Below are positions 19,253-43,129 of a DNA stretch of 64,000 nt, one piece after another. Location: positions 496,001-560,000 of the forward strand of contig NIVC01000386.1 of the NCBI GenBank assembly GCA_002269645.1, read 5' to 3'. The stretch is from Macrostomum lignano. Its lineage: Eukaryota. Position 1 is the first letter of the stretch. Every line of letters starts with the position of its first letter. The notes below the pieces were generated by a model. The model was not told the origin of the DNA. It ran no database searches and was given only the letters and a program-made list of their open reading frames with translations. The position numbers and the translations under genes were made by a program.

Positions 19253-22200
19253 GGCATCGGCTGGATTTGCTGCACAATTTCGGCTTCTAAGCTGCCAGCT
19301 GCTCGAAATTTCGTCGGCTTGCCCGAATTCTGAAGCAAAATCTGGCATGGCTCTGCGGCTCTGCGCCCAGTCGGCCAACTCCGAATGGCAGCTGCTTAAC
19401 CAGTTATCGGTGAGTGGCTGAATGCTTCTAGGAAAGCTAATTTATGGAAAAACTGCCTCAGCATCTCTGTTGACACCATCTTTACTCCCTGGCCTCTTTC
19501 TCTTCCGGGCTCAGAATAAAAGTTGTCAGGCTTACAGACCACTGAAAGTTAGCTACAGCTCTAGTAGGCGCAGCCAAACCGCTTGAGTTTCAACTGAAAC
19601 TACATGCATACTACCAAATTTTAACTTGATGCGATTGCAAGCGGTCGCTGCGATGTTTCTTCCACGGAATTCACGGAAATTTTTTGTATGCGTCAAACAC
19701 ATTCGTCCTTACAGAACGCAGTCCAAGGCTCAGAGGACGCGGTGCTGGAGTCCGTGACGCACGGCAGCCCCAGCTCTTCTGGTTGGATGCCCCAGTTGGA
19801 GCCGTCTAGTGGCGCAACGTCCGATCACGTAAGTTTGACAAAATTTTGAGAACCACTTAGCTAATTGAGTATCCGGAGAAATGTCTAAAAAACGAAAACA
19901 CAGAATCTTGGTCATGCAAATGGTCGCAAAGTATAGCTTAAGTTAAGGCATAGTTTTGAACAAATTTCATGCTACTTGCGAGATCCTCTGTAACCAAACC
20001 CCACACCCGACGCCTCGATCGCGCAGTCCAGTCCGGCTGATCGCCTTCAGCAGTTCTGGCTGGAGGCCGGCAGCCTTGCTACCTGCCTGCAGCTGCAGCT
20101 GGAGCAGCAGAAATCCTACCACCTGGTGAGTGACATTGGCTATACTAAGCTCTCACGTGAGCTGTATGTAATTGCTACCTATGGCTAATCTGGCTGTCAT
20201 CACCACCTGTCCAACCTGGCAGTTCTACCAAACCCTGGCTCACTACGAGGCCAGCCTGGAGGCAGAGTTCGACCAGGCCAGGGAGCGGCTGCAGCGACTG
20301 GAGGGTCACAAGGAGGACGCCAGCGCCATACTTGATTGCACTCAGGTGCGAGTCCTAATAATTGGTTGTTCTCGTATTTCGTGTAAAAAAACTCTATCAC
20401 GCCATTATGCATTTCGTACTTAGGAATTTTGATCCTTGCGAAGTCGAAATCAGCTAATAAGCTCCTGTTGATCACTTCCCACAGAACCTGCTCACCACCT
20501 CCATACTCTGGTGGCGCCGAGTGGACTCAATAATGGCGCAGAGTCGCCGCTGCCCCCCACTGTCAGCCCGTCTGGAACCGATTGAGTTCAAACGACCGGC
20601 TCAGCTTCTTGTGGACTTTGCTGCGCCAGAGGTAAGATTAAAAGCAGATTTATTTTAGCATTGGATTGCAAATCACAATACGGTAACTCTCATAGTGATT
20701 TTTGGCACCATTATGGGGTCCCGGTTCTCCTCTAGCCGCAATTCCAATCTCTGAGGATTTAAAGAGGCCTGAAACTATGCCATAGACTTGCATTAAATGA
20801 GAAACAGCAAGTGTTGCGCTTTAAAGTACACGTGTTTGAATGGCGCACGATTAGTATGGTACGAGCTACGAGTATGATGTAGTTAGTTAGATAAGTAAAA
20901 GACAAGATATTGGGGTTGATTGCGCTCGTTGCGCCCATCAATATCATCTTATATTTGGCTTATAAATTTCGACTTTATGTGAAATTTAGAATAAAAATAG
21001 CATTGCAAAAATCATCAGGAAAGACTCGCTCCAATAATAAATAGTGATTGTCAAACCCAGCCGATAACAACTTGATTGGAAAGTGACCGCTTTTAAGAGT
21101 TTCATTCTTCATAACACACGAATAGTGGAGATCAGAGCAAGGAGAGACTCGGAAATCAAACGAACCTTTTAATGAATTTTAAGAATTCAAAGCTTTCTAG
21201 AAGTATAAATGTTTATTCACCTTCTAATTTCGATGCTTTAACCTTCGTTCCTACTCTACGTTTTTACTCTGTGCAAAAATTCAAACTTTATACTTTATAC
21301 TTTATTCTTCCAAGGGAGCCTTATTGATTTTGATTGCACTTTGTTAAATTGATTTTTCGAGCTCAGATTTTAGCGAAGACTGAAAGGATGAAAGAAGGAT
21401 GAAAGCGCTCAGGCTGATGACGCAGTGGTCATTTGTTGCTGTTCTTGTTGGTGTAGAAGTACGGCTGCTCAGGGCTCAGGCACTCGATCGGCTCGCCGAT
21501 GTGCCAGTCCGTCCGCTTGGCCCCGACCGGCTCGATCATGTTGTTCCAGAGGGCCTGGGCCGCGCGGGCGTTGCCCAGCCCGCTGAGGTGGAAGCAGTCC
21601 GGGGCGAAGTAGGCCAGGTCCGGCTTGCCGCACCTGTTCCTGCATTGCGGAGTCCAGTAAGTACGATTATGTGGTTGTCTTTTAACGAGGTTTTGAAGCC
21701 TGCTGCGCTACTGAGTCACCAACGTGGTATTAAATCTCCACGCTGGAATCTCGTCCGTCCAAGCGACCAGCTGTTGCACTGGCGTTGCAAGCACCTTACT
21801 GACGAGGACAAGTGCGCAATTTGCGTTTCTGTTCGAGCTTTGAGACTTATCTTGTTCTTCTTAGACTTTTCTGATAGTATGCTTTGTTTCTGCTATTTTG
21901 ACGAGTAGATCGTCTATTGAACGGACGTGAACAACAGTACTTCATCGGTTAAGTAGCTTGATTTGTAGTAAAAACAAATAAACAAACAGTGTTTCCAAAC
22001 AGAGCTTTTGGAAACTATTTAGGGAAATTTTAGCATTCAGATACTGTACGAACGGCCGGAAAAGGAGTGGTAAGAAAACTCACTTAGGCAGAACAGTTTT
22101 TTCCAAGAAAGGCTGCAGCACCACTGTGAAGTCATCCCTGGTGTCGTACACACCGGAGCTCACCAGCGCAGACAAGTTGCCCTGGTACTCAAGAACGATC

Positions 22201-25200
22201 TGACGCAGCTCTTCCGTTGGCTGTTTGAAGGCGCCGCAGCGGCACTCGAAGTAGTGCAGAACGGTGCAGGCCAGGCCGCGGTTCAGCTCCTTGATCTGCG
22301 ACACGTCCAGCACGTTGACAACGTTGACGAAAGCGCGTGGCACCTCGCTGTGCAGTAGGTCGAGAGCTCGCTTAATGTTCGCCGTGTACATCTCCGCGGC
22401 GTAGTACCTGGGGTTCTTGCAGTAGGCACATAGATCATTGCCGCCGATGAACAAAGTGATTACCTTCCAGTCATTCTGGTAGTCCACAGTCGGATCCGCC
22501 TTCATTCGCTGGATGAGGTCGTAAGCCTGCAGTGAAGGATCGCAAATTATTCAGTCTCGCACTACAAGCGTTTTAATAATTGGGAATGAACTTCTATAAC
22601 GATAGGGATACGGTTCGCGCATGTTTGGTGAAATAAGCACTGTACCTGCTTGAGCATATCCTCCGATTTTGCTCCCGGTACGGCAACATCGAAACCGCGC
22701 GACTTCTTCAAGACGCCCTTAGCGTAACCACGCAGGTTGGGGTTGTACTTGAGCAGGATGTTTGGCAGAGTGGGAATCCATCGGTAGTTCAGGTCGGCCC
22801 CAATGCTGAACACGGAGCCGCGGAATGACAGCACAATACCTAGTGGTGTGAAGGCGTGGATGCCGGAGCCAGCCGAGATGGAGTCTCCGATGGCGCCGAC
22901 CACCTGAAGTTTATCGGGTTTTGGATAATTCGATGTTGAATAAGTCAGCACACAATGAGTGACTTGCACAGAATTTCACTTTGCCAAAGTAGTAATCGAA
23001 ACATACCTGGACGTCAGCCGGAGTCAAAGCGTGGACACTGGTAGCCGGCTGGGCAAGCTTGAACGGAGAGCAGGGAAAATCGTAGCCGATTCCTTTGAGC
23101 ACTTGTCCCAGGGCCGATGAGAATCCGAGCTCCGCTGTTTCATTCAGCATCGCCTGTCGCAGCGTTGCATTGGACTCAATCACTTTGATGACTCTCTCCA
23201 GCGTCTCGGTCCAATTCCCTGTGTCGCCTTGCATTGTTGGGTCGCTTAGGATGGTTGTCAGCGCATCAGTCGGTGTCACTGATGAGCGGTTCTCAGCTGG
23301 GCAGTCAGCTTCTGGCGCTGAGATGCCGGCTGAGCAGCCGAACAGGGCTGCAAGTAGCAGCAGCAGAGGAATTTGCATGTCTATAGAGGCTTAGATAGGC
23401 CGGCCGAAACACAGAAGCAGAAGAGCTTGTCAGAGACTAGAACAGAGCAGGTACCTTTGCATGCTTTCAACAGCAGATAAAAAGTTGCATAAAGCGTTTT
23501 ATTGCGACTGATTAGCGTTAGGGGCTGTCGAAGACAAAGATAGCAAGTTTATGCAGGTAGTTCTTATTTTTCTTGAGGACTAATGCCCCGAATGCACTAT
23601 TGCTCAGGTCTTTGACTCCGTGCGTCAAGGCAACAAGTCCATGCCAGTTCAGTGCGACAGATAAGTGCTGGGCTCTGCCACTGCACTTCTGATATTTCTT
23701 TCTCTCCCTATCTTTATTTTCTTGTGCCACGGTCGAGGTCACGTGATTCATAAAAATTGTTATAAATAGACACTGGCCCAGTCAATGTACGCTTCTGAGA
23801 AGTGTGCTTCGAGTTTCTTGACCAATGATGACAGCTGACCAAATGTAACGATAAAATGATTTTACGTCATATAACATTTCTCTACTGCGCGGAGAAGTAC
23901 AAAGAATGCCGTTCAGACAGTCTCTGTAGAACCCTGGAGCCTGTATAAACGTGACAGTGTGACCTTAATGTTGCACCAGCGGCTGTAATAATGAGGGGTT
24001 GGTTTGAGAGACAAAGGCAGAGAATCTGCTTGCCGAAAAAACGTCTCGAGACCAGATTTAAGATGGTTGCAACACTGTTTAGACATAATATTAAAAACAT
24101 GATCAATCCATCACGAACCAACTTATACAGGTCTCAGTGAAGACAGGAAGCGAAGTATTTCTAGTCGACAACACCAACCGAGACCAGTGGATCGTGGAAA
24201 CGTGCGGCGGCGTTTGTCTCGGCGTGCCGTCGCTCTGCGTGACCATCGCGGGCGGCGACCCGGCGGCGCTGGAGCGTGCGGCTGCGCTGAGGCTGCGCCT
24301 GCTGGCCAGCTGGACAATCGCGCTCAAGGAGATCGGCCGGGCGCTCATCGGGTTCATGCTGCAGGTGTTCCGACGGATCAGTGCAATCGAAAGTCAGGTA
24401 GGTCACTTTCCTTCTTTCCAGCTAAGCTCAACGATCCTCACGACATCTCTGTCGTCCACTTTTCCGCAGACAGAGGCTCCCTGCGTCGTGACATCCCACC
24501 AGGACATCATAACTGATGGAGAGCTTCGCCCTTTGCTGGCCACGATGGAGCAGCTGCTGCAGAGCTACTGGGCTCAGCATCCCGAATTTGAAGAGCTGCG
24601 CGACCGAATGCGGCGTGTCCGAGCTTCTTTAGCCATCTGCGACGCCGAGGACTGCCTTGACGACTGGACTCGTATTGATATCCGTGAGTCAGGGACGTCC
24701 GTATTGTTAGTTAGGAAAAGCTTCCCGTAACTCCATAGCTTAACTAATTCGAAACTCCAGACACGATATTTCTGAGGCTAAGTCCTCTGGTAATGTCGTC
24801 ATCTGAAGAGCCGGACTCTGTCACCAAGCAGAACGAAATGCATGGCCTCTTAGGCCAGCTGATGCGTCGGTACCGCGATCTGACGAGACACTGGGAAGCT
24901 TTCCGACTCAGCGGGGACGGCAGCGGCTCATCCGCGTTTGGAAATGACGAAACCGCGAGTTTTCAATTTTGCCGCGACCTGACCGAGTAAGCTTATTTTT
25001 GACTGGAGTAGAGTGCGAACTGTCAAGTTTATAAATATCTACCATTAAAAACTCTCGAAAATACTTACAGTAATACTCGTAGGTAAATTGTTCAGTTTTA
25101 ACCTAAAACAGGTACGTACCTTTATATGAGTTAACTAATCCTAGCTGAATTTACCAAGAAACAGGGAGCCGCAACATGGAAGTAATGAGGAGGCCTGGCC

Positions 25201-30376: not shown

Positions 30377-31459
30377 AAAACGCACCCGTGTGAGTCAGCA
30401 GAGCTACTCAAGATGGGTCAGGCGTAAAAAGCTTAAGTACATGCTAATCGTAAAGTCGACTGTAGCTACGGTGATTGATAGCCACCCTGAACGAAACGAA
30501 ATTTTTTTACAGTTACAGTAATACAGTAATAATTGTTCGCAGATTTCTTGTTCAATAGAAAAATTCTAGCAAGTTTCAAGCAGTAAAAGTTTCAAAAAAT
30601 AACTAATTCAATTATCGTTGTTTGCTATTTGAATAAACATTAACAATATTTGTATTATTACTGATGTGCTTTAAAAATTTAAACAAAACTGCGATGGATG
30701 AGGAACAGGGAAGACACAACCCCAAAAATAAGGGGATGCCATTGTGCAGTAAATCCTGCTTCCTTGAAGACGTCACAAAGGTTGATCAGCAAGGAAACAG
30801 TTAAAAACATTTTTTCTCGTTGTTAGCGTAAATAATAGCAAATTTAATTCCAGTTTTGTCTGAATGTTTTTAAACAGAAATAGCGCTAAACACATGCTTA
30901 GCCCTATTTTTATCAGAACATGTTATACACGCTGATATTCAGAACACTTTTTATATTCTCTCCACTATATATTTTAATGGTGTTTTCTTTTACTTTTAAT
31001 TTCAGTAAATAAAATGTCTGAGTTAGCGTTAGATTTTCTTTCTGAATTTTTACTAACTGCTGAATTCGCCTATAGTTCTTGTTGTTTCATTTCTGTACAA
31101 TTTCACAGTTTAGCGGCAAAATATACCATTGTCACTACTTACGATTACTGAGTAGTGCAGCGCCAAAATTAATTCTTAGATTCAAACTCTAAATCAAAAA
31201 ACGGTCTTACGGCCTTACTCGTTAAAAAAGTTGGAGCCACGAACACTCGAGACCCGCGGTGCCGCTGGCCTCTATACGTGTATGCATGAGACTGCTGTCT
31301 TTTGACGTTGTCAATTGTCTTTTTATTTGAAGGAGACAATTCAACAGCGAACATTTTAGACTCTCACACCAGTACTGCATCAGGCAGTCACGTGACCTGT
31401 AAAATCAACCAGCCAGGAGCTTCCATCCTAAAGTTCTACGTAGAACGTAAAATAACTTG

Positions 31460-31823
31460 ACAGGCACTCGCAGATGGTGTTGTCAATCAAACGGGGACAG
31501 GCACTCGCAAATGGTGTTGTCAATCAAACGGGGACATGCACTCGCAGATGGTGTTGTCAATCAAACGGGGACAGGCACTCGCAGATGGTGTTGTCAATCA
31601 AACGGGGACATGCACTCGCAAATGGTGTTGTCAATCAAACGGGGACAGGCACTCGCAAATGGTTTTGTCAATCAAACGGGGACAGGCACTCGCAAATGGT
31701 TTTGTCAATCAAACGGGGACAGGCACTCGCAAATGGTTTTGTCAATCAAACGGGGACAGGCACTCGCAAATGGTGTTGTCAATCAAACGGGGACAGGCAC
31801 TCGCAGATGGTGTTGTCAATCAA
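31460..31823. repeat. 37-bp tandem repeat, ~10 copies, overlapping the stop codon of the lectin-like ORF
   Basis: acaggcactcgca(a/g)atggtgttgtcaatcaaacgggg every 37 bp from 31460 to 31793. Confidence 0.95.
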
Positions 31824-32287
31824 CTGCCGGTTCTCGGGCGAGTCGAACAGAACCATCTTGTCGCGGCGCAGCTTGATGGCGTTCGCCTTTCCTAGAAAAT
31901 TGTTGGGGTCGCCCGGGTACCACAGCCGGGCGTCGATCTCGATGCCGCAGTCGGTCCAGTGCCAGCCGCCACCGGGCTCGGGGCTCCCCGGGCTCTGGTA
32001 GCCGCCCAGCCAGAACAGGTCGTCGGCAGCGGCGGAGATCCCCACCAGGTGGCTCAGCTCCGCCATGTCCGTCACGTCCGCCATGATGGTGAGTCCGGGC
32101 TCGGAGTTGCACTTATCTCTGCTCAGCTGCCACTCTCCGGGAACTTCGAAAACTCGGTACTTCACTCCGCACAGCTCGTCGCCGTAGCCGGCCGGACACA
32201 GCGAGCCCGCCGAGAGTCCCGGCTGCCGCTTCACGAACAGGCGGCCTCTCCTGGAGCAGCCGCAGTCCCGACTTGCTGCACTTGTCT
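31779..32287 (-). pseudogene. 5'-truncated paralog of the PAN + C-type lectin gene (linker + CTLD only)
   Basis: Nearly identical to 34470-34645 up to cttgctgcacttgtc (~32287), where homology stops; 5-nt deletion just inside the break; CTLD motifs FWLGG, GWHWTDC, WYPGDPNN, CEC. A spliced form via tttcaag|ac cannot be excluded. Confidence 0.6.
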
Positions 32288-32787
32288 TGAAATTTCCATT
32301 AGATTCTAAAACTGCTTCGGTTCACTTGGCTTCAGATTTCTGCTGCTGGTAGCAACACAATGGCTCGCTGGCAAACCGGTTGGCTTCACCGGCTCTTCAT
32401 TGCTGGTCCTCAAAGACGACATGAGAGGCCCTCGATTCGAGTGGAGGGAGAGCGGCGCCAAGCTTGAGTGCGACTGAATGGATTGGATGAAAAGCTTGCA
32501 AGCTCGCTTCAAACCGTCGAAAATGCATAGTCAGAGCTCCTGCTCAGGCTGCTGCAGTTTTGAACAACTTTTTTGGCTCTAGTAGAGCAGAGGTTCAGAT
32601 AATAGCTCAATCTAAAGCTGCTAAGCAAAGCTCAATTCTCAAGTTCTCAAGCTGATTTAGTCCTCAGGAGTTTACTATTATTTTTGGTCTTTTTAGTATA
32701 TATTGATATATGGGATTTAGGTTTATAACCTTATGTAGCTAAAACCTACACTATAAAATTGATACTTTTGGATGGACGGACGGACAA

Positions 32788-32906: not shown

Positions 32907-33595
32907 AAGATATAAACTCAAGGAACATGGCTACAGGTACAAGATATAAATTCAAGGAGCACGGCTACAGGTACAAGATATAAGTTCAAGGATCACGGCT
33001 ACAGGTACAAGATATAAATTCAAGGAGCACGGCTACAGGTACAAGATATAAATTCAAGGAGCACGGCTACAGGTGCAAGATATAAATTCAAGGAACACGG
33101 CTACAGGTACAAGATATAAGTTCAAGGATCACGGCTACAGGTACAAGATATAAATTCAAGGAGCACGGCTACAGGTGCAAGATATAAATTCAAGGAACAC
33201 GGCTACAGGTACAAGATATAAATTCAAGGAACACGGCTACAGGTACAAGATATAAATTCAAGGATCACGGCTACAGGTGCAAGATATAAATTCAAGGAGC
33301 ACGGCTACAGGTACAAGATATAAGTTCAAGGATCACGGCTACAGGTGCAAGATATAAATTCAAGGAACACGGCTACAGGTACAAGATATAAATTCAAGGA
33401 ACACGGCTACAGGTACAAGATATAAATTCAAGGATCACGGCTACAGGTGCAGGATATAAATTCAAGGAGCACGGCTACAGGTACAAGATATAAGTTCAAG
33501 GATCACGGCTACAGGTGCAAGATATAAATTAATTAGGAACACGGCTACAGATACAAGAATTAAATTCAAGGAACACAGCTTCAGGTACAAGATTC
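32907..33595. repeat. 34-bp tandem repeat, ~19-20 copies
   Basis: ggctacaggtacaagatataaattcaagga(g/t/a)cac at 32929, 32963, 32997 and onward. Confidence 0.97.
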
Positions 33596-34132: not shown

Positions 34133-34873
34133 TCAGTCGAAAGGCGATACGCATTCACAAAGGGCGCCAAAGAGACCCATGTCGGTGATGTCCACTACGT
34201 CTGTTACGGTCGGGAATAGAGCGGTGGCCATTTCGCTAAATCCACTCGGTTCACCAGTTCCCCACACAGAGCCGATCGTGATGTTGCAGCCGACCCAGAA
34301 CCAGCCATCTGTCTCCTGGGCTCCCGGAAACACCCGGTAGCCGCCCAGGTACATGGGATTGGTGGGGGAGTGAGCGACAAACAGGACATTCACGTGGCTC
34401 AGCTCAGCTGCGTCAGCGACATCGGCCATGATCACCAGGCCCGGCTCCGACTCGCACCTTCCTCTCTGAACCGCCCAAGTTGCGTTGTTCTTCAGCACGC
34501 GGTACTTCACTCCGCACAGCTCGTCGCCGTAGCCCACAGGACACAGCGAGCCCGCCGAGAGTCCCGGCTGCCGCTTCACGAACAGGCGGCCTCTCCTGGA
34601 GCAGCTGCAGTCCCTCACCGACTTGCTGCACTTGTCGAACACGAACAGCTGGCACAGACCGTCGGCGGTGGTGAAGGCCTGGCAGCGCTGATCGGAGCCG
34701 CAATGCAGAGAGCACGGCAGGTCCGAGGTGATGCCGCTCAGGTTGCGGGTGAAGGCGCTGCGGATGCAGAGGGAGCCATTGGTGAGTTGTCTGAAGCACT
34801 GCTCAATCTCTTGAGCAGCAATGAGACAGACAGCTGGGAGACTGCAAAGGATTAGACCAGCCTTTGCATTCAT
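34133..34873 (-). CDS. Secreted PAN/apple + C-type lectin-like protein, intronless CDS
   Basis: ATG 34873, signal peptide MNAKAGLILCSLPAVCLIAA; PAN SDLPCSLHCGSDQRCQAFTTADGLCQL; CTLD RCESEPGL..MADV...MYLGG...WFWVGC...WGTGEPS...LCEC. Confidence 0.85.
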   Translation of the reverse strand: MNAKAGLILCSLPAVCLIAAQEIEQCFRQLTNGSLCIRSAFTRNLSGITSDLPCSLHCGSDQRCQAFTTADGLCQLFVFDKCSKSVRDCSCSRRGRLFVKRQPGLSAGSLCPVGYGDELCGVKYRVLKNNATWAVQRGRCESEPGLVIMADVADAAELSHVNVLFVAHSPTNPMYLGGYRVFPGAQETDGWFWVGCNITIGSVWGTGEPSGFSEMATALFPTVTDVVDITDMGLFGALCECVSPFD

Positions 34874-35343
34874 TGAACTCAGATGATGTTGCGGACGCAA
34901 GACGCAAATTTTTTAATCTGAAGGCAAGCTTAATATGAGTACGTAGGGTTGCATTTGACAAGAGTCGCAGTGCCGCTCTGCCATTGGCTGATCAAAATAA
35001 TCATACAACGTAGCGGCGCATGAAAAAGATGGAAAACTATTATGGGGCCGAGCTGCCGGCCAGCTCGCGAAAGTGTATTCAGCTCGCCAGTGACGCATGA
35101 AACGGGCCAGGCCTATGGGCTTAAAACACTGGCAGACTCTCTAGGGGACTTCCAAAACCACAGGAAGTCCACGAAATGCGTCCTGCAGCTAAGTGAAGAG
35201 CTGAAGGTTAAAAAAGTCAGACACTGATTTTGTCACGTCAGGCGCCGAACCAGTTTAATGGACTATGAAGCCAAACAGAGCCACAGAGGCAAGAGCTTGC
35301 TGAATAATTGGGGTACAAAGAGAAAATCAGAGGCACAAAGGAG

Positions 35344-37290
35344 CAAACTGATTCTTACCACGCCGATGACACCGACGCCACCGACAGGTCCTCCCACCTC
35401 CCCACTGCTGTCGCCAGTGTGTCGGTGTTGCCGCCGCCGCCGCCGCTGTTGCCACTGATGCTGCAATCGCCGCCTGTATTCGATAAGACAATGGAGCTAC
35501 AGACAAGAGCTTGCTGAACATTTGAAGTGGAAAGAGAAATTCAGAGACACCACAAAGAAGCAAACTGATTCTTACCAGGCTGATGACAGCGACGCCGGCG
35601 ACAGGTCCTCTCACCTCCCCACTGCTGTCACCAGTCTGACATCAGCGTTGCCGCCGCCGTCGCTGTTGCCGCCGCCGTTGCTGCCGCCACTGTTGCCATC
35701 GCCGCCGCCATCGCCGCCACCATCGCCGCCTGTATTCAAAAGACAATAGAGCCGCAGACAAGAGCTTGCTGAATGATTGAAGTGGAAAGAGAAACTCGGA
35801 GACACCACAAAAAAGCAAACTGATTCTTACCACGCCGATGACACCGACGCCGCCGACAGGTCCACCCACCTCCCCACTACTGTCACAAGTCTGTCGCTGT
35901 TGCCGTCGCTGTTGCCGCCGCTGTTGCCGCCACTGTTGCCGCCGCTGTTGCCGCCGCTGTTGTCGCCGCTGTTGTCGCCGCTGTTGCCGCCGCTGTTGCC
36001 GCCACTGTTGCCGCCACTGTTGCCGCCACTGTTGCCGACTGCATTCGAAAAGACGATTGAGTCAGAGACAATAGCTTGCCGAATAATTGAAGTTACAAAA
36101 AGAAAATCAGAGACACAAAAAAGCAAACTGATTCTTACCACGCCGATGACATCGACGCCGCCGACAGGGCCTCCCACCTCCCCACTGCTGTCACCAGTGT
36201 GTCAGTGTTGCCGCCGCCGCCGCCACCGCCGCCGTAGCCTCCACCGCTGTCTCCATCGCTGCGTCCGCCGCTGTGTCCGCCGCTGTGTCCGCCGCTGTGT
36301 CCGCCGCTGTGTCCGCCACTGTGTCCGTCGTTGTGTCCGCTGCTGTGTCCGCCGCTGTGTCCGCCGCTGAGTCCGCTGCTGTGTCCGCCGCTGTGTCCGC
36401 CGCTGAGTCCGCTGCTGTTGCTGCCTGCATTCGAAAAGATGATTGAGTCAGAGACAAGAGACAAAGGTACAAACAGAAAATCAGACACAAAGGAGCAAAC
36501 TGATTCTTACCACGCCGATATCGACGCCGCCGACAGGTCCTCCCACCTCCCCACTGCTGTCACCAGTGTGTCGGTGTTGCCGCCGTTGTTGCCACCGCAG
36601 CCGCCGCTGTATCCGCCACTGTTGCCGCCGCAGCCGCCGCTGTTGCCGCTGTATCCGCTGCTGTTGCCGCCGCTGTTGCCGCTGTATCCGCCGCTGTTGC
36701 CGCCGCTGTTGCCGCTGTATCCGCCGCTGTTGCCGCCGCTGTTGACGCCGCTGTTGACGCCGCTGTTGCCGCTGAGGTTGCTGCCGCAGCCGCCGCAGCC
36801 GCCGCTGTATCCGCCGCTGTTGCCGCTGCAGCCGCCGCTGTTGCCGCCGCAGCCGCCGCAGCCGCCGCTGTTGCCGCTGTTGCGGCTGTATCCGCCGCTG
36901 TTGCCGCCGCAGCCGCCGCTGTTGCCGCCGAGGTTGCCGCCGAAGCCGCCGCTGTATCCGCCGCTGTTGCCGCTGTATCCGCCGCTGTTGCCGCTGTATC
37001 CGCCGCTGTTGCCGCTGTATCCGCCGCTGTTGCCGCCGAAGCCGCCGCTGTATCCGCCGCTGTTGGCGCTGTATCCGCCGCTGTTGCCGCCGAAGCCGCC
37101 GCTGTATCCGCCGCTGTTGCCGCTGTATTCGCCGCTGTTGCCGCCGAAGCCGCCGCTGTATCCGCCGCTGTTGCCGCCGCAGCCGCCGCTGTTGCCACTG
37201 TTGCCGCTGTTGCCGCCGCTGTTGCCGCCGCTGTTGCCGCCGCCGCCGCCGCCGCTGTTGACGCCGCAGATGCCGCTGTTGCCGCCGGTT
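35344..37290 (-). other. Five tandem exon-like modules: Gly/Ser/Asn/Tyr-coding tract + conserved tail [18 protein letters not shown]-stop
   Basis: Shared core caaactgattcttacca at 35344, 35561, 35816, 36124, 36496; minus-strand acceptor-like ttttcgaatgcag / cgaatacag precedes four of the tracts. Confidence 0.5.
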
Positions 37291-37299
37291 GGACAAAGA

Positions 37300-39100
37300 A
37301 AAGAGCAGAATAATTGAAAAGATGAAGAGTAGAAGAGAAATGGTTTTAGGGTAGATAGAGAGAAATGGAAGAGATCCGGGGAATATGAATGGAATGATAT
37401 GAATGGCGGAATACATGTAATTGTAGAAAAGGAGCTGGAGATTTTGAAGAAGAAAAATTAAAGAGAAAATAAGGGAACAGGTGTATTTGTATCAGGGTTA
37501 GTTTTGTTATAAATAGGAGATAAATAGTAAAAGATAAAAGAGGAGAAGAGAAATTATGTTAGGGTGGTAAAAATTCCGGGAAGTGAGATGGGAATGGCGG
37601 GATAGGGAGTAATTGGAATGGTGAATTAATTTAATAAGAAACGAAAATAACGGGGGATGACGAAATTGTTTTGTTAATACTATATAGAGAGAGTAAATTT
37701 AGGTTAGAATAATATTATGTTATGTTAGGGTTGATAGGGAAGGATCGGAAGGGATCCGGGAAGTATGATGGGAATGGCGGAAAAATAGTCGAAAGGAAGG
37801 GATTACAGAAAAATTGAAGAGTATATTAGGGAGCAGGTGTACTTGAAACAGGGTCAGTTTGTTATAAATGAGAGGAGAGTGGAAGAGAGATTATGTCAGG
37901 GTGATAAATGATTGGAAGGAATCCGAGAAGTGGGATGGGAATAACGGGATAGGGAGTGATTGGAATGGGTGGAGTGATTTAGTGGGAATGGAAAATAATG
38001 GGGGATGAAGAAATTATATTTGTTAATATTGGGAAACCTGTCTGAAGTTGAAAAGAGCTAGCCAAACTTTTTCCAACTCCCTCAGGTTTGACCCTCTACT
38101 CCTCTTTACTATTCCGATTCTTGTCCATGGCAAAGAATCGTGATTGTAGGGAAGAGTAGCGAAAGAAGGGATTAGAGACAAATTAAAGAGTAAATTGAGG
38201 GAACAGGTGTCTTTGTAACAGGGTTAGTTTTTTATAAATTGGAGATGGAAAGTATGTTAGAGTTGATAGAGAAGGATCGGAAAGACAGATCCGGGAAGAA
38301 TGATAGGAATGGCCGGATAGATAGTAGAAAGGAAAAGAAAAGTGATTAAACAAAAATTAAGGAGTAAATTTAGAGGGCAGGTGTACTTGTCGCAGGGTTA
38401 GTTTGTTATAGATGGGAGATGGAGAGTAAAATAGAAATTATGTTAAGGTTGATAGAGAAGGGTCGGAAGGGATCCGGTAAGTATGATAGGGATGGCGCAA
38501 AAATATTTTAAAAAGAAAGGGAGAAGTGAATAAAGAAAAGTTTAAGAGTAAATTAAGGGAGTTGGTGTATGTGTAACAGGTTAGTTTGCTGTAAATGGGA
38601 CATGGAGAGAAAAGAAATTGTGTTATGGTTGGAAAAGTTCCAGGGAGTGGGATGGGAATAACGGGATAGGGAGCGATTGGAAAGGGTGGAATGATTTAGT
38701 GGGAATGGAAAATAATGGGGGATGAAGAAATTATTTGTTAATATTGGGAAACCTGTCTGAAGTTGAAAAGAGCTAGCCAAACTCTTTCCAACTCCTTCAG
38801 GTTTGACCCACTACTCCTCCTTACTATTCCGATTCTTGTCCATGGCAAAGAATCGTGATTGTAGGGAAGAGTAGCGAAATAAGAGATTAGAGAAAAATTA
38901 AAGAGTAAATTTAGGAAACAGGTGTATTTTAAACTGGTTATTTTGTTATAAATGGGAGATGGAGAGTAGATGAGGAATGTTAGGGTTAATAGAGAAGGAT
39001 TAGAAGAGATCTGGAGAGTGGGATGGGAATGGCGGGATAGATAGTAGAAATGGAGGGGGGAAGAGATTAGAGAAAATGTTAAAGAGTAAATAAATGAATG
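37300..39100. repeat. Purine-rich diverged tandem/higher-order repeat
   Basis: Recurring gagaaggatcggaagggatccgggaag and caggtgtacttg...gggttagttt blocks; ~37920-38200 is duplicated at ~38640-38930. Confidence 0.8.
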
Positions 39101-39550
39101 GAAAGTTTGAGTGAATGAGAAGTCCAGTCGTTGCGCTGCCGCCGGTGTACCACCTGCACCTGCGGGCGGCGAATTTCGGGGGGGGGGGGCGAGGGGGGCG
39201 GGGCGGTGTGGGGTTTGGGAATTTATTGGGGAGCGAGGGCCGGGTGGAATCTGGGTTGGGGGTTATTAATGAATCGAATTTTTGATTAAATAGATGATCA
39301 ATCAAAAATAAAATTGGATTAATTTGTTATGGATCATTGGAATCATTTAGTGTCTGATTTTTAGTGATTGAAAAGAAGTGATTGTTTTTTTTTTTTTGTT
39401 TTTTTGTTTTTTTTTGTTTTTTTGCTTTTGTTTTATTGCTTTTTTTGCGCTTTTAGGATTTTTTTGAAGAATTGAACTCTCGAATTGCAGCAACCAATCA
39501 AGAAGTCCCAGCCCTTGCAAAATGCCACCTCGCTCACCGGGAATCCGCAA

Positions 39551-39847
39551 TCACCACTCCTCAAAGGAGAAGTAACTGTCGACCGACGGGAGCGCTCCGC
39601 AGGCCGCCATCATTCGCCACCTAAACTGTTCTTCGAAGTTTCTCTGGACTTCAAATTGAAGCCGCAGAAACTCATCGAAAATGGCGTCCTCACGTTTCTC
39701 CTTCGGTGCTTCCTGCTTCTGCTCCTGCTTCTGCTTCTGCTCCTGCTTCTGTTCCTGCTTCTGCTTCTGCTCCTGATCCGAGCGGTAGCGTTTGGGCACG
39801 AAGCGCCTGCGGATGCGTTTCAAGACTCCTTCGTAGCAGCTGGGCAT
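39551..39847 (-). CDS. Hypothetical 98-aa charged protein with QEQKQK repeats
   Basis: ATG-initiated ORF with coding-like GC content and a plausible helical composition; no recognisable domain. Confidence 0.3.
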   Translation of the reverse strand: MPSCYEGVLKRIRRRFVPKRYRSDQEQKQKQEQKQEQKQKQEQKQEAPKEKREDAIFDEFLRLQFEVQRNFEEQFRWRMMAACGALPSVDSYFSFEEW

Positions 39848-40085: not shown

Positions 40086-40770
40086 TCACTCTCGAATATG
40101 TCACTCTCGAATATGTCACTCTCGAATATGTCACTCTCGAATATGTCACTCTCGAATATGTCACTCTCGAATATGTCACTCTCGAATATGTCACTCTCGA
40201 ATATGTCACTCTCGAATATGTCACTCTCGAATATGTCACTCTCGAATATGTCACTCTCGAATATGTCACTCTCGAATATGTCACTCTCGAATATGTCACT
40301 CTCGAATATGTCACTCTCGAATATGTCACTCTCGAATATGTCACTCTCGAATATGTCACTCTCGAATATGTCACTCTCGAATATGTCACTCTCGAATATA
40401 TCACTCTCGAATATGTCACTCTCGAATATGTCACTCTCGAATATGTCACTCTCGAATATGTCACTCTCGAATATGTCACTCTCGAATATGTCACTCTCGA
40501 ATATGTCACTCTCGAATATGTCACTCTCGAATATATCACTCTCGAATATGTCACTCTCGAATATGTCACTCTCGAATATATCACTCTCGAATATGTCACT
40601 TTCGAAAAAATCAACACTCTTGAAAATATCACTTTCGAATATGTCACTCACGAATAAGTTACTCTCGCATATGTCACTCTCGAATATGTCACTCTCGAAT
40701 ATGTCACTCTCGAATAAGTCACTCTCGAATTTGTCACACTCAAAAATAGCTCTTGAATACCTCACTCTTG
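40086..40770. repeat. 15-bp minisatellite (tcactctcgaatatg), ~34 near-perfect copies then decaying
   Basis: Direct reading; explains the overlapping TLEYV / RVTYS / SNMSL ORFs. Confidence 0.98.
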
Positions 40771-41022
40771 GACACGTGAAGAACGTCACAGTGAGCCTAT
40801 TCTCTTGCCTCCTCTGCAACCTTCTCCGCCATGCACCCATCTGCATCTTTTCTTCCGCCTTCGTTATCCTCTTCAACGCCTTCTCATTGCTGCTCTACTT
40901 CTTTTTGAAAAAGCCTGTCACACCGGCAACTGACCCGCTCACCTGAGCAGTCACTATGACCTACCTACCCGTGCAAACGTGATTGAAGGCCAATTGTTAC
41001 ATGCACCGAGGGAAGCCACGGA

Positions 41023-41803
41023 CCCGGCAGAGCTGTCGCCGGTCCGCATCTGCTCTGACTCCCTGAGCGCGCTCAGCGCGCTCGCGTCCGGCCCTGGGTC
41101 GACGGGCGCCACCATGATCGACGCCGTCTGGGCCAGCCTCGCCGACCTCGCGGCCCGGAAAACCTCGGTCCACCTGCAGTGGGTGCCTGGCCACGCGGGA
41201 ATCCCCGGCAACGAGGCCGTGGACGAGATCGTCAAGCGAGGCTCCACGCTGGCGCAAGGCACCGCGCCCGTGCCGTTGGCTGCCGCGCAGGCTGCCGTCC
41301 GCCGCCACTGCCTCGCCCGCTGGCACCAGACCTACAACGCGGCGGCCACCGAGGCGGCGAGCACGAGCTCGCTGGCCTGGCACCTTGCCTGCACGGCGGG
41401 CCGCCTGCCGCCTCCGCCGACGAATGACCTCACGCGGCGGCAGGAGCGGCTGATCTGCCAGCTGCGCGCCGACCGCTGCCCGGCCCTGCGGGGCTTCCAG
41501 GCCGCCATCGGCGTTGACGTGGCCCCCACCTGCCGCTTCTGTGGCGATGGAAAGGAGACGGCGGCCCATCTGCTGATCTCCTGCCCCGCCCTGACTCCAC
41601 ACCGCTGCCGCCTCTGGGGACCAAGCCCGGAGCCCGCGGCAGTTTTCGAGAACTGCGTCGCGGTGTTGAACTTCCTCGGGAAGGCGGGCGCCGTCTGACG
41701 CCGGTGCCATGGGCCCTGGCCCGAGCGCGCCCGAAGAAGAAGAAGAAGAAGAAGAAGAAGAAGAAGAAGAAGAAGAAGAATAAGAAGAATAATAATAAGA
41801 AGA
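41023..41803 (+). mobile_element. 5'-truncated non-LTR retrotransposon (RNase H + C-terminal CCHC, I-group-like) with (GAA)n tail and 14-bp TSD
   Basis: ICSDSLSAL...VHLQWVPGHAGIPGNEAVD (RNase H), CRFCGDGKETAAHLLISC (zinc knuckle), stop at 41698, (GAA/TAA)n tail ~41733-41803; agggaagccacgga at 41009-41022 and 41804-41817. Confidence 0.93.
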
Positions 41804-42505
41804 AGGGAAGCCACGGATCGCTTGGGCAAAGTTAAGAACTAAAGAAAGAAGCGCTCCGCTCGTTCAAACAAACATTCTCAACCAAATATGTTAGCTTTCA
41901 TGCACATACGCACTACTACAAGTAACACGGACAGGGTGCGTGCTGTTAAATAGACTTGAAAGTAGCCTTGCTGCGCCACTTCCTTCGCTTGAGCCTCAAC
42001 TTCACCGGCCAAACACACAGAGAGTGGCGGTCCGACTGCGCAAAAAAGTCAAGCAAGACGCAACTCTTATCTCTCCTTGGCTGCGCTCACGGACTGCCCT
42101 GTGGTTCCGACTCTGGCGCTACTCTCTGCCCCTGCGGTCCCCGCTTTGTTATTTAGAAGCCTTTATAAATAGAAAAACCAAATGCATGGCAAGCCTTCTT
42201 TTCAAGCAGCTGAAGAGGTCTCTAAAAGAGCAGCTGGCTCAGCTCAGTCCAGACTCGCTTCTTCATCTAAATGTAGAGTACGAGTATTCCCTGCCCCGCC
42301 TCACCTGCTAGTATTCAGTACAGTTCGCTGCCATGTTTTCAGTCCGACTAACGTTACTTTTGCATGTAGCTCGTAAAACAGCTGTGTCCTATGCCAAAAC
42401 TATGCTACTAGCAGCAGCATCTTCTGCTTTGGGTCTTTGTTGTCTTTCAAAGTATTTTTATCGTTTCGGTTTGAAGTTTTAAAAATAAATAAATATAACA
42501 ATGTA

Positions 42506-42512
42506 GACAGAC

Positions 42513-42573
<61 letters not shown>

Positions 42574-42590
42574 CACAGACAGACAGACAC

Positions 42591-42633
<43 letters not shown>

Positions 42634-42634
42634 C

Positions 42635-42673
<39 letters not shown>

Positions 42674-42727
42674 CACAGACAGACAGACACACAGACAGAC
42701 ACACAGACAGACAGACAGACAAGACAC

Positions 42728-42762
<35 letters not shown>

Positions 42763-42831
42763 CACAGACAGACAGACAGACAGACAGACAGAAAGACAGA
42801 CAGAAAGACAGACAGACAGACAGACAGACAC

Positions 42832-42908
<77 letters not shown>

Positions 42909-42921
42909 AAGACAGACAGAA

Positions 42922-42984
<63 letters not shown>

Positions 42985-42985
42985 A

Positions 42986-43080
<95 letters not shown>

Positions 43081-43129
43081 AAGACAGACAGAAAGACAGA
43101 CAGACAGACAGACAGACAGACACACAGAC
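42506..43129. repeat. (GACA)n microsatellite, ~620 bp
   Basis: Direct reading with CACA/GAAA interruptions. Confidence 0.98.

What the first reader, a model, noticed from the sequence alone, without database searches (positions are those of the whole stretch)
35344..37290. Array of five exon-like cassettes with stepwise-growing Gly-rich tracts and a shared tail: possible alternative terminal exons
Seen: on the minus strand four modules start at an acceptor-like site (35474, 35730, 36039, 36425) and all five end in ...GCG TGG TAA. Spacers of ~70-100 nt match real intron sizes here. Module spacing grows 217, 255, 308, 372, then >800 bp. In one common frame (phase-1 entry) the tracts read GGNSGG / GGHSGG / GGYSGNSGGYSGGFGGN, almost all C-ending codons with variation in positions 1-2, then [18 protein letters not shown]-stop (module 2 has a TGG>TGA change). 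If TG|GTAAG is instead a donor, the four measurable exons (115, 154, 208, 286 nt) are all 3n+1, a pattern compatible with mutually exclusive exons. Inference: a cassette system that tunes the length and Tyr content of a Gly-rich structural protein (Gly/Tyr-rich eggshell or adhesive proteins are known in flatworms). No upstream exon was identified and module 5 lacks a clear AG.
Basis: partly seen in the sequence, partly recalled or inferred. Interest (0 to 1): 0.7.

Follow-up and report, generated by a model that had tools for sequence, protein, structure and literature searches.

The report
Tandem glycine-rich exon-intron repeats, flatworm
A flatworm (Macrostomum-like) locus holds five tandem copies of one exon-plus-intron unit from an orphan glycine-rich protein gene; only one copy per mRNA can be read in the glycine frame, but no start exon or transcript evidence was found, so use as a switchable cassette system is unproven.

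Summary
On the minus strand, five homologous modules (35359-37290) each hold a triplet-periodic Gly-rich tract, a 66-69-nt unique tail and a GTAAGAATCAGTTTGCT...YRCAG spacer of 86-102 nt. Exons measure 115, 154, 208 and 286 nt, and the fifth is about 780 nt. The Gly frame is the best of six frames for local codon usage (CAI 0.77-0.92). Exon indels are all multiples of 3; spacer indels are not. Both spacer ends are far more conserved than the middle, as in real introns.

The shared TAA is part of the GTAAG donor. The shared 3n+1 length follows from common descent plus in-frame slippage.

Each module enters in phase 1 and leaves in phase 2, so no two can be joined in the Gly frame. At most one per mRNA can encode Gly-rich protein.

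Evidence against a working cassette system:
- No start codon, signal peptide or convincing upstream exon.
- Module 5 has no phase-1 acceptor.
- Module 2 has stops in all three frames.
- No poly(A) signal lies between modules.
- The tail shows no codon-position signature of purifying selection.
- No relative exists in any protein or DNA collection searched.

Verdict: a lineage-specific tandem exon duplication. Alternative use is plausible but not demonstrated.

The parts
36511..37290 (-). Module 5: about 236-codon Gly/Ser/Asn/Tyr/Cys/Phe tract (37290-36580) plus a 22-codon tail ending ...SAASISAW. It has no phase-1 acceptor and no start codon.
   Evidence: G112 S54 N37 Y15 C10 F4 of 260; CAI 0.92; 92% C-ending codons; all nearby AGs are phase 2.
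36425..36510 (-). Spacer/intron 5>4, 86 nt, GTAAGAATCAGTTTGCT...CTGAC...TTTTCGAATGCAG.
36139..36424 (-). Module 4 exon, 286 nt: (GGHS)n tract with Leu variants, plus tail ...[15 protein letters not shown].
   Evidence: H10; CAI 0.77.
36039..36138 (-). Spacer/intron 4>3, 100 nt.
35831..36038 (-). Module 3 exon, 208 nt: (GGNS)n tract with Asp variants, plus tail ...[15 protein letters not shown].
   Evidence: CAI 0.90.
35730..35830 (-). Spacer/intron 3>2, 101 nt.
35576..35729 (-). Module 2 exon, 154 nt: GGD/GGN tract. The tail has TGA (35611-35613) in the Gly frame, and both other frames also contain stops, so this is probably a dead copy.
35474..35575 (-). Spacer/intron 2>1, 102 nt.
35359..35473 (-). 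Module 1 exon, 115 nt: short tract plus tail ...GRWEDLSVASVSSAW. It is open in all three frames.
35201..35358 (-). Sequence after module 1. The first ~90 nt are homologous to the other spacers and the rest is unique. It contains ATTAAA (35254-35259), an 11-bp complement to the invariant 18-mer (about 35246-35259), and a CTGAC-TTTTTTAACCTTCAG acceptor-like site (first exon base 35200). In phase 2 that site would add 29 poorly adapted codons.
   Evidence: The acceptor and the 29-codon reading come from direct inspection.
37325..39300 (-). Pyrimidine-rich (on the minus strand), degenerate satellite of about 180/360/720-bp periods, abutting module 5. It occupies the place where an upstream exon or promoter would be expected.
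   Evidence: GC skew 0.33; families D6-D17.
38825..38843 (-). Lead only: gccATGGACAAGAATCGGAATA|GTAAGG. This is a Kozak-like ATG mini-ORF with the only GT[AG]AG in the satellite. Its phase-1 donor would join the module acceptors in the Gly frame (MDKNRN-S-...). The paralogous copy at 38128 has GTAAAG.
   Evidence: 6% by shuffling; about 0.8 expected at the window-wide rate.

Best explanation
This is a lineage-specific tandem duplication of one exon-plus-intron unit from a gene for a glycine-loop type low-complexity protein in a Macrostomum-like flatworm.

Structure. Each unit holds a codon-optimised, triplet-periodic coding minisatellite (Gly-Gly-X-Ser, with X = Asn/Tyr/Cys/Phe, His, Asn or Asp, depending on the module). 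This is followed by a 22-23-codon unique tail and a ~100-nt intron bounded by GTAAGA and YRCAG. After duplication, each tract changed length by in-frame slippage or unequal exchange and became homogenised to its own variant.

Consequence of the phases. Every module is entered in phase 1 and left in phase 2. Two modules therefore cannot be joined in the Gly frame, so at most one module per mRNA can contribute Gly-rich protein. That module would act either as the last coding exon (downstream intron retained, stop = the TAA inside the donor) or as a one-of-N cassette (donor used, reading continues in a downstream phase-2 exon).

Shown: the anatomy, the phases, the codon bias, and the intron-like conservation pattern.

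Inferred: that the Gly frame is translated, that a 5' exon exists elsewhere, and that more than one module is still used. M2 is probably dead, and M5 must use a different entry.
For: - Five homologous units with exact coordinates.
- The minus-strand Gly frame has the highest codon adaptation of six frames. CAI is 0.92, 0.77 and 0.90 for the M5, M4 and M3 tracts, against 0.70 for reference ORFs in frame and 0.57 off frame. 74-92% of tract codons end in C.
- All tract periods are multiples of 3: 9, 12, 21, 33 and 54.
- Exon length differences (39, 54, 78 nt) and the single tail indel (3 nt) are multiples of 3. Spacer indels of 1, 3, 5 and 11 nt are not.
- The spacers match real introns of the GDSL-lipase gene in the window (103, 119 and about 440 nt). 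They also match the M. lignano cis-splice motifs GT[G/A]AG and CAG (PMC8629364).
- Variable columns: 2 of the first 25 spacer nt, 3 of the last 15, and 35 of the middle 63 (p = 1e-5; p = 0.003 without gap columns). The first 17 nt of the spacer are invariant in all five copies.
- The tail is less variable than the spacer: 14/65 versus 40/105 columns (p = 0.03).
- No frame stays open across the spliced product E5-E4-E3-E2-E1 (worked out from the frames).
Against: - No ATG in the Gly frame, and no signal-peptide exon with a phase-1 donor in 12.7 kb upstream.
- The 2 kb upstream is a satellite, and beyond it lies a separate small gene with its own AATAAA.
- M5, the most coding-like module, has only phase-2 AGs.
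- M2 carries stops in all three frames.
- Tail substitutions fall 2/7/4 on codon positions 1/2/3 of the Gly frame. By my manual count on the alignment, about 11 are replacement and 4 silent. This gives no protein-level purifying signature.
- No AATAAA or ATTAAA lies between modules.
- High CAI in a slippage-amplified repeat can persist after loss of function.
- No relative of the tail or of any frame of tail plus spacer was found in 5.8 billion clustered proteins or 1.84 billion representatives. Exact DNA scans of metagenome contigs also found nothing.
- No transcript data could be reached.
Confidence: 0.45

Rival explanations
1. Dead relic: a fragment of a former Gly-rich gene (terminal or internal exon plus flanks) that was tandemly amplified in a repeat-prone genome. 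It is now cut off from its 5' exons by the satellite, is not translated, and is decaying.
For: - No start, no upstream exon, and a satellite directly abutting M5.
- M2 has stops in all three frames, and M5 lacks the shared acceptor.
- The tail substitution pattern looks neutral in the Gly frame.
- The window is full of mini- and microsatellites.
- No homologue was found anywhere.
Against: - Both ends of the spacers and the tail are significantly better conserved than the spacer middle. Uniform neutral decay does not predict this.
- Four of the five Gly frames are intact.
- All exon indels are multiples of 3.
Confidence: 0.3
2. Non-coding composite satellite: a 217-372-bp higher-order repeat containing a GC-rich 12-mer minisatellite. 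Its exon- and intron-like features are coincidental.
For: - Neighbouring sequence is rich in tandem repeats of many periods.
- All three frames of a simple repeat are trivially open.
- The TAA and the 3n+1 lengths are by-products.
Against: - Every period is a multiple of 3, and one frame out of six uses the locally preferred codon for Gly, Ser, Asn, Tyr, Cys, Phe and His.
- There are canonical GTAAGA donors, and polypyrimidine tracts ending in CAG, at both ends of every spacer, conserved above the spacer middle.
- The tract is more degenerate (68-77% matches) than the clearly non-coding arrays nearby (88-99%).
- There is only one locus in 64 kb.
Confidence: 0.1
3. Another reading frame or strand is the real product. 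One option is the minus-strand Arg/Gln frame, which has an ATG at 37416 and a hydrophobic N-terminus (311-aa ORF 36481-37416). Another is the plus-strand Pro/Leu frame (328-aa ORF 36331-37317).
For: - Both are the longest mechanical ORFs in the region.
- The Arg/Gln frame has a start codon and a phase-0 donor.
- Tail substitutions fall 4/2/7 on its codon positions.
Against: - CAI is 0.53 (Arg/Gln) and 0.69 (Pro/Leu) for the M5 tract, against 0.92 for the Gly frame.
- The Arg/Gln frame has stops in M4 and M2.
- The plus strand has no consistent frame across units (unit lengths mod 3 are 0, 2, 0, 1) and no GT...AG spacers.
- The hydrophobic N-terminus is what any pyrimidine-rich satellite translates to.
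- The 4/2/7 split is not significant (n = 13).
- No homologue of these frames was found.
Confidence: 0.05
4. Operon-like series of SL-trans-spliced mini-cistrons. Each CAG acceptor would receive the spliced leader, whose terminal ATG starts translation.
For: - The M. lignano SL ends in ATG, and operon intergenic distances peak near 100 bp (PMC8629364).
- The spacers here are 86-102 nt.
Against: - An SL-ATG at these acceptors reads the Ala/Thr frame, with CAI 0.60-0.69 for the M5, M4 and M3 tracts, which ends THW*/TDL*/SDW*.
- No poly(A) signal lies in any spacer.
- The acceptors (A-T-R-C-A-G) do not fit [T/C]TNCAG at the first position.
- The invariant GTAAGAATCAG block points to cis-splicing donors.
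Confidence: 0.03

Closest known systems
Clusters of mutually exclusive exons that arose by tandem exon duplication (Dscam, 14-3-3zeta, Mhc, MRP1; human atlas PMC5740500; origin and docking/selector model PMC6071210)
   Same: - Neighbouring homologous exons with homologous introns.
- Identical entry and exit phases, and lengths not divisible by 3, so that joint inclusion shifts the frame.
- A conserved element immediately downstream of every variant exon, with a possible complement in the unique intron after the last one (p about 0.01, post hoc).
   Different: - Lengths range from 115 to about 780 nt, whereas the human prediction pipeline allowed at most 60 nt difference.
- The variable part is a low-complexity tract, not a folded segment.
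- No flanking constitutive exons were found.
- One member has an in-frame stop and one lacks the acceptor.
- There is no junction-read evidence.
Alternative 3'-terminal exons (own acceptor, own stop, own poly(A) site)
   Same: Four modules have an acceptor and all five end in an in-frame TAA. The only poly(A)-like signal (ATTAAA) lies about 100 nt after the last module.
   Different: No poly(A) signal follows modules 5-2. The stop lies inside a conserved GTAAG donor, so it acts as a stop only if that intron is retained.
Glycine-loop structural proteins: trematode eggshell/vitelline precursors, loricrin and keratin end domains, and Gly-Tyr-rich cuticle or chorion proteins. This comparison is from my own knowledge and was not tested here.
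   Same: The composition of M5 is G 43%, S 21%, N 14%, Y 6% and C 4%, with aromatic or Cys residues spaced by Gly/Ser loops. The repeats are coding minisatellites with strong codon bias.
   Different: No sequence similarity was found and no signal peptide. Modules 1-4 have almost no Tyr. Tissue and function are unknown.
Schistosome micro-exon genes (MEGs). This comparison is from my own knowledge.
   Same: These are flatworm lineage-specific genes in which exon choice varies a secreted protein, arranged as arrays of short exons with short introns.
   Different: MEG exons are very short and symmetric (3n), so they can be skipped freely. Here the exons are 3n+1, much longer, and paralogous to each other.

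Membership tests
Mutually exclusive exon cluster (criteria of PMC5740500) | Neighbouring exons with sequence similarity | tested here: met
   Tail identity is 85-97% and spacer identity 77-90% between modules.
Mutually exclusive exon cluster (criteria of PMC5740500) | Same reading frame and phase at both ends | tested here: met
   E4-E1 all enter in phase 1 and leave in phase 2 in the Gly frame. M5 shares only the donor.
Mutually exclusive exon cluster (criteria of PMC5740500) | Similar lengths (the pipeline allowed up to 60 nt difference) | tested here: not met
   Lengths are 115, 154, 208, 286 and about 780 nt.
Mutually exclusive exon cluster (criteria of PMC5740500) | No in-frame stop codon in any member | tested here: not met
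   M2 has TGA at 35611-35613 in the Gly frame. The other four are open.
Mutually exclusive exon cluster (criteria of PMC5740500) | Internal position between constitutive exons of compatible phase | tested here: inconclusive
   No signal-peptide exon with a phase-1 donor was found in 12.7 kb. The only leads are the mini-ORF at 38843-38825 and an acceptor-like site at 35201 followed by 29 poorly adapted codons.
Mutually exclusive exon cluster (criteria of PMC5740500) | Junction reads show exactly one member per transcript | not testable with these tools
   No transcript data for this species could be reached. The window's proteins are not on record in the assemblies.
Alternative 3'-terminal exons | Each exon is followed by its own cleavage/poly(A) signal | tested here: not met
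   No AATAAA or ATTAAA lies in 35360-37300. The first is ATTAAA at 35259, after M1.
Alternative 3'-terminal exons | Own 3' splice site and an in-frame stop | tested here: met
   Four modules have an acceptor and five have a TAA. The TAA is part of the conserved GTAAG.
Flatworm Gly/Tyr-rich eggshell or adhesive proteins | Sequence homology to a described member | tested here: not met
   No Pfam family was matched. No homologue was found by word-indexed search or by exhaustive profile search.
Flatworm Gly/Tyr-rich eggshell or adhesive proteins | N-terminal signal peptide | tested here: not met
   No ATG in the Gly frame and no candidate exon.
Flatworm Gly/Tyr-rich eggshell or adhesive proteins | Expression in shell-forming or adhesive gland cells | not testable with these tools
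   This needs in situ hybridisation or single-cell data.
Non-coding satellite or transposable-element-borne repeat | Many dispersed genomic copies with random frame damage | not testable with these tools
   Only the 64-kb window is available, and it holds one locus.
SL-trans-spliced operon (M. lignano type, PMC8629364) | A poly(A) signal upstream and a [T/C]TNCAG trans-splice acceptor before each cistron, each with an ATG-initiated ORF | tested here: not met
   There are no poly(A) signals in the spacers. The acceptors read ATGCAG or ATACAG. An SL-ATG would open the poorly adapted Ala/Thr frame.

The most novel reading that the evidence does not exclude
A working one-of-five exon choice in which a single flatworm gene selects the length (14 to about 236 codons) and side-chain chemistry (Tyr/Phe/Cys, His, Asn or Asp) of a glycine-loop domain. 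Each module would be dual-use because its stop codon sits inside its own 5' splice site: intron retained gives a C-terminal exon, intron spliced gives a cassette. The choice might be guided by pairing of the invariant 18-mer after each exon with a docking sequence after the last module.
Probability: 0.2. Interest if true: 0.7.

Novelty: new member of a known kind. Interest (0 to 1): 0.4.

Why it matters
If the modules are really used one at a time, this would be a mutually exclusive or alternative-terminal exon cluster whose members differ mainly in the length and chemistry of a low-complexity tract. That would be a simple genetic way to tune a material-type protein, and an unusual departure from the 'similar length' rule of known clusters. 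Even as a partly decayed array it is a clean snapshot of how tandem exon duplication and coding-minisatellite slippage together generate exon families. It also shows that shared stop codons and shared length classes can be by-products rather than evidence of design. As it stands it is an orphan, locally interesting feature of one flatworm genome.

Tried and rejected
- **Homology of the tail.** A word-indexed search found no candidate. An exhaustive HMM profile of four tails against 1.84 billion representatives gave only two spurious hits, a bacterial repeat protein and a sushi-domain protein.
- **Other frames.** A chimeric query of all other frames and strands of tail plus spacer found nothing with E <= 10.
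- **Exact look-up.** Neither the neighbouring lectin nor the small upstream ORF is on record in public assemblies, so no transcripts of this species could be reached.
- **Related lectin transcript.** The 5' UTR of a related lectin transcript (L001) shows no Gly-rich leader, so the array is not a lectin 5' UTR.
- **Family libraries.** Pfam gave nothing on three frames, and Rfam gave nothing on the whole window.
- **Metagenome DNA scans.** A 21-mer and a 25-mer of the core gave 0 hits.
- **Docking/selector pairing.** In a 7-kb scan the best duplexes were no better than shuffled queries. Only the location-restricted test reached p about 0.01. RNAalifold on the spacers gave a weak hairpin with no covariation. 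No inverted repeats of 25 nt or more were found.
- **Truncated spacer before M5.** The similarity is not significant: score 23 against a shuffled mean of 18 +/- 2.6.
- **Upstream mini-exon at 38843-38825.** It is phase-compatible, but about 0.8 such sites are expected at the window-wide rate.
It has its own stop and an AATAAA about 115 nt downstream. Its internal GTGAGG in phase 1 is unremarkable at the background rate.
- **Constitutive splicing of all modules.** Every starting frame hits a stop in E5 or E4.
- **Literature.** Searches for Macrostomum glycine-rich or eggshell proteins found nothing relevant.
Full report
**Observation**

- The block TGGTAAGAATCAGTTTGCT occurs five times without a mismatch, against 0.04 expected. 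Copies are spaced 217, 255, 308 and 372 bp apart.
- The 33-nt tail core occurs five times with at most 2 mismatches, against 0.00 expected.
- GAATRCAG acceptor-like sites end at 36425, 36039, 35730 and 35474.
- This gives exon-like segments of 286, 208, 154 and 115 nt, and spacers of 86, 100, 101 and 102 nt.
- A fifth, first module of about 780 nt has no such acceptor. All AG dinucleotides near its start are phase 2 in the Gly frame.
- In the common frame the tracts read GGYSGNSGGYSGGFGGN (M5), GGHSGG (M4), GGNSGG (M3), GGDGGG (M2) and a short mixed tract (M1).
- All tracts run into T(D)[21 protein letters not shown] followed by TAA. M2 carries TGG>TGA.
- 74-92% of tract codons end in C.

**Context**

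The window is eukaryotic and repeat-rich and has no Rfam matches.
- Immediately downstream on the same strand lies a single-exon gene with a signal peptide, a PAN-like region and a C-type-lectin-like region (34133-34870). Its best hits are Macrostomum lignano C-type lectin proteins at 62-63% identity. A paralogue sits at 31.8-32.3 kb.
- The source is therefore a Macrostomum-like flatworm. None of the six homologues retrieved (four from M. lignano) matches the window better than about 63%, so the exact species could not be fixed.
- A related lectin transcript has an ordinary 5' UTR, and the lectin has its own CCAAT/TATA-like upstream region. The array is therefore not the lectin's leader.
- Upstream of module 5 a pyrimidine-rich degenerate satellite runs from 37325 to about 39300.
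- Beyond it is a separate 98-codon gene (39847-39551) with its own stop and AATAAA.

**Which frame**

Codon frequencies were taken from twelve ORFs of the window, about half of them confirmed by homology.
- The minus-strand Gly frame has CAI 0.92 (M5), 0.90 (M3) and 0.77 (M4).
- The other five frames score 0.53-0.79. Reference ORFs score 0.70 in frame and 0.57 off frame.
- It uses the locally preferred codon for Gly, Ser, Asn, Tyr, Cys, Phe and His.
- All repeat periods (9, 12, 21, 33, 54) are multiples of 3.
- The tract is more degenerate (68-77% matches) than the clearly non-coding arrays nearby (88-99%).
- The Gly frame is open in four modules. The Arg/Gln frame has stops in M4 and M2. The Ala/Thr frame stops in the tail of every module except M1.
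- Caveat: a slippage-amplified repeat keeps its codon make-up after inactivation, so this evidence shows a coding origin, not present translation.

**Are the spacers introns**

- Their sizes match proven introns of the GDSL-lipase gene in the window (103, 119 and about 440 nt).
- GTAAGA and YRCAG match the M. lignano cis-splicing motifs GT[G/A]AG and CAG (PMC8629364).
- The pattern of change among copies is that of exons and introns. Exon length differences (39, 54, 78 nt) and the one tail indel (3 nt) are multiples of 3, whereas spacer indels are 1, 3, 5 and 11 nt.
- Only 2 of the first 25 and 3 of the last 15 spacer columns vary, against 35 of the 63 middle columns (p = 1e-5; p = 0.003 without gap columns).
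- The first 17 spacer nt are invariant in all five copies. The probability is 3e-5 at the variability of the rest of the spacer and 0.008 at the tail rate.
- The tail is also less variable than the spacer (14/65 versus 40/105 columns, p = 0.03).
- The boundaries of 25 and 15 nt were chosen after seeing the alignment, and the copies are not independent lineages. This is good but not conclusive evidence that both splice sites and the tail have been under constraint.

**What the phases allow**

In the Gly frame each module is entered with one base of a codon supplied from upstream, and it ends TG|, which is two bases of a codon.
- With all modules spliced in series, every starting frame meets a stop in E5 or E4 (derived).
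- So at most one module per mRNA can be read as Gly-rich protein.
The TAA is the T-A-A of GTAAG. All exons are 3n+1 because they descend from one exon and changed length only in units of 3.

**What is missing**

- There is no ATG in the Gly frame.
- No signal-peptide exon with a GT[AG]AG phase-1 donor was found in 12.7 kb upstream.
- The satellite contains a single GT[AG]AG, at 38824. It is preceded by gccATGGACAAGAATCGGAATA in phase 1, which would join the modules in frame. Such ATG-plus-donor sites occur at about 0.4 per kb in the window, so this is only a lead.
- The M. lignano spliced leader ends in ATG. Placed on the module acceptors it opens the Ala/Thr frame, and placed on the AGs before M5 it opens the Arg/Gln frame.
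- No AATAAA or ATTAAA lies between modules. The first is ATTAAA at 35259, about 100 nt after M1. This speaks against five independent terminal exons.
- After M1 the spacer homology ends, and a good acceptor-like site (CTGAC...TTTTTTAACCTTCAG, first exon base 35200) follows. In phase 2 it adds only 29 codons of poor codon usage (read).
- Tail substitutions fall 2/7/4 on codon positions 1/2/3 of the Gly frame. By my manual count on the alignment, about 11 are replacement and 4 silent. The tail therefore shows no protein-level purifying signature (n = 13, weak either way).

**RNA pairing lead**

The invariant 18-mer has an 11-bp complement (TTAAACTGGTTC, about 35246-35259) in the 76-nt unique stretch after the last module, at -16.3 kcal/mol.
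- About 1% of shuffled queries or random 76-nt windows do as well.
- This is the layout described for docking sites downstream of some exon clusters (PMC6071210).
- However, the test was post hoc. In a 7-kb scan the best duplexes equal those of shuffled queries. RNAalifold on the spacers finds only a weak hairpin without covariation.

**External evidence**

None was found.
- The tail has no relative by word-indexed search or by an exhaustive profile search of 1.84 billion representatives, which gave two spurious hits.
- The other five frames of tail plus spacer have none.
- Pfam is silent.
- Two exact DNA scans of metagenome contigs are empty.
- Proteins of the window are not on record in the assemblies, so absence of transcript-derived proteins says little about expression.

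**Explanations**

| Explanation | Confidence |
|---|---|
| Lineage-specific tandem exon-plus-intron duplication in a gene for a glycine-loop type low-complexity protein, with tracts resized by in-frame slippage. At most one module per mRNA is usable in the Gly frame, as a terminal exon by intron retention or as a one-of-N cassette. M2 is probably dead and M5 is entered differently. | 0.45 |
| The same structure as a dead relic cut off from its 5' exons | 0.30 |
| Non-coding composite satellite | 0.10 |
| Another frame or strand is the product | 0.05 |
| SL-operon of mini-cistrons | 0.03 |

The monotonic size order (115 < 154 < 208 < 286 < about 780, chance 2/120) remains unexplained.

**Comparison and novelty**

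The nearest known kind is a tandem-duplication-derived cluster of mutually exclusive exons.
- The similarity and phase criteria are met.
- The similar-length and no-stop criteria are not met.
- Flanking exons were not found, and junction reads are untestable (criteria from PMC5740500).
- It does not qualify as a set of alternative terminal exons, because internal poly(A) signals are absent.
- The likeness to trematode eggshell proteins or loricrin-type glycine loops rests on composition only and on my own knowledge.

I file it as a new member of a known kind (tandem exon duplication with a coding minisatellite), with interest 0.4. The most novel reading not excluded is a working dual-use one-of-five length and chemistry selector. 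I give it about 0.2 probability and an interest of about 0.7 if true.

Noticed in passing
window 37325-39300: A degenerate satellite with about 180/360/720-bp periods, almost purely pyrimidine on the minus strand (plus-strand GC skew 0.33). It contains two 206-nt purine-bearing blocks (38017-38222 and 38732-38937, 94% identical). Each block carries a Kozak-like gccATGG mini-ORF, MDKNRNSKEE.
   Followed up: partly
window 34133-34870 and 31779-32288 (minus strand): Two tandem paralogous single-exon genes for secreted PAN-like plus C-type-lectin-like proteins. Their best relatives are Macrostomum lignano CTLD proteins (62% and 48% identity). Pfam itself gives no hit.
   Followed up: partly
window 39551-39847 (minus strand): A 98-codon ORF with an Arg/Lys-rich start, a (EQK)n run and a helical-looking C-terminus ending EEW. 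AATAAA lies about 115 nt downstream. No family was matched.
   Followed up: partly
window 40979-41698 (plus strand): A GC-rich ORF with an RNase H domain (E = 4e-8) and a weak zf-RVT match. This is a remnant of a non-LTR retrotransposon.
   Followed up: partly
window 40086-40741: A very regular 15-mer tandem array (43.5 copies, 94% matches), open in all six frames.
   Followed up: no
window 31459-31823 and 32907-33593: A 37-mer array (9.9 copies, 96%) overlaps the 3' end of the second lectin ORF. A 34-mer array (20 copies, 92%) lies between the two lectin genes.
   Followed up: no
window 42505-43129, 52852-53395, 54304-55167, 61701-62029, 11694-11922, 58395-58588: Further micro- and minisatellites: (AGAC)156, (TATC)135, a 20-mer x43, a 20-mer x16.5, a 56-mer x4 and a 69-mer x2.8. 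The window is unusually prone to tandem repeats.
   Followed up: no
window 21440-23378 (minus strand): A multi-exon GDSL-lipase/phospholipase-B-like gene with a signal peptide. It has clean introns of 103, 119 and about 440 nt (GTATGT, GTACAG, GTGAGT ... CAG), used here as the local intron yardstick.
   Followed up: partly
window 60414-60896 and 55344-55757 (minus strand): A secreted WSC-domain ORF (E = 6e-15) and a GSKIP-domain ORF (E = 1.5e-24).
   Followed up: no
window 35359-37290: Module size rises monotonically along the array towards the 5' end of the minus strand: 115, 154, 208, 286 and about 780 nt. The two end modules (M5, M1) share tail and 5'-spacer character states that the inner modules lack. 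No mechanism was established for either pattern.
   Followed up: partly
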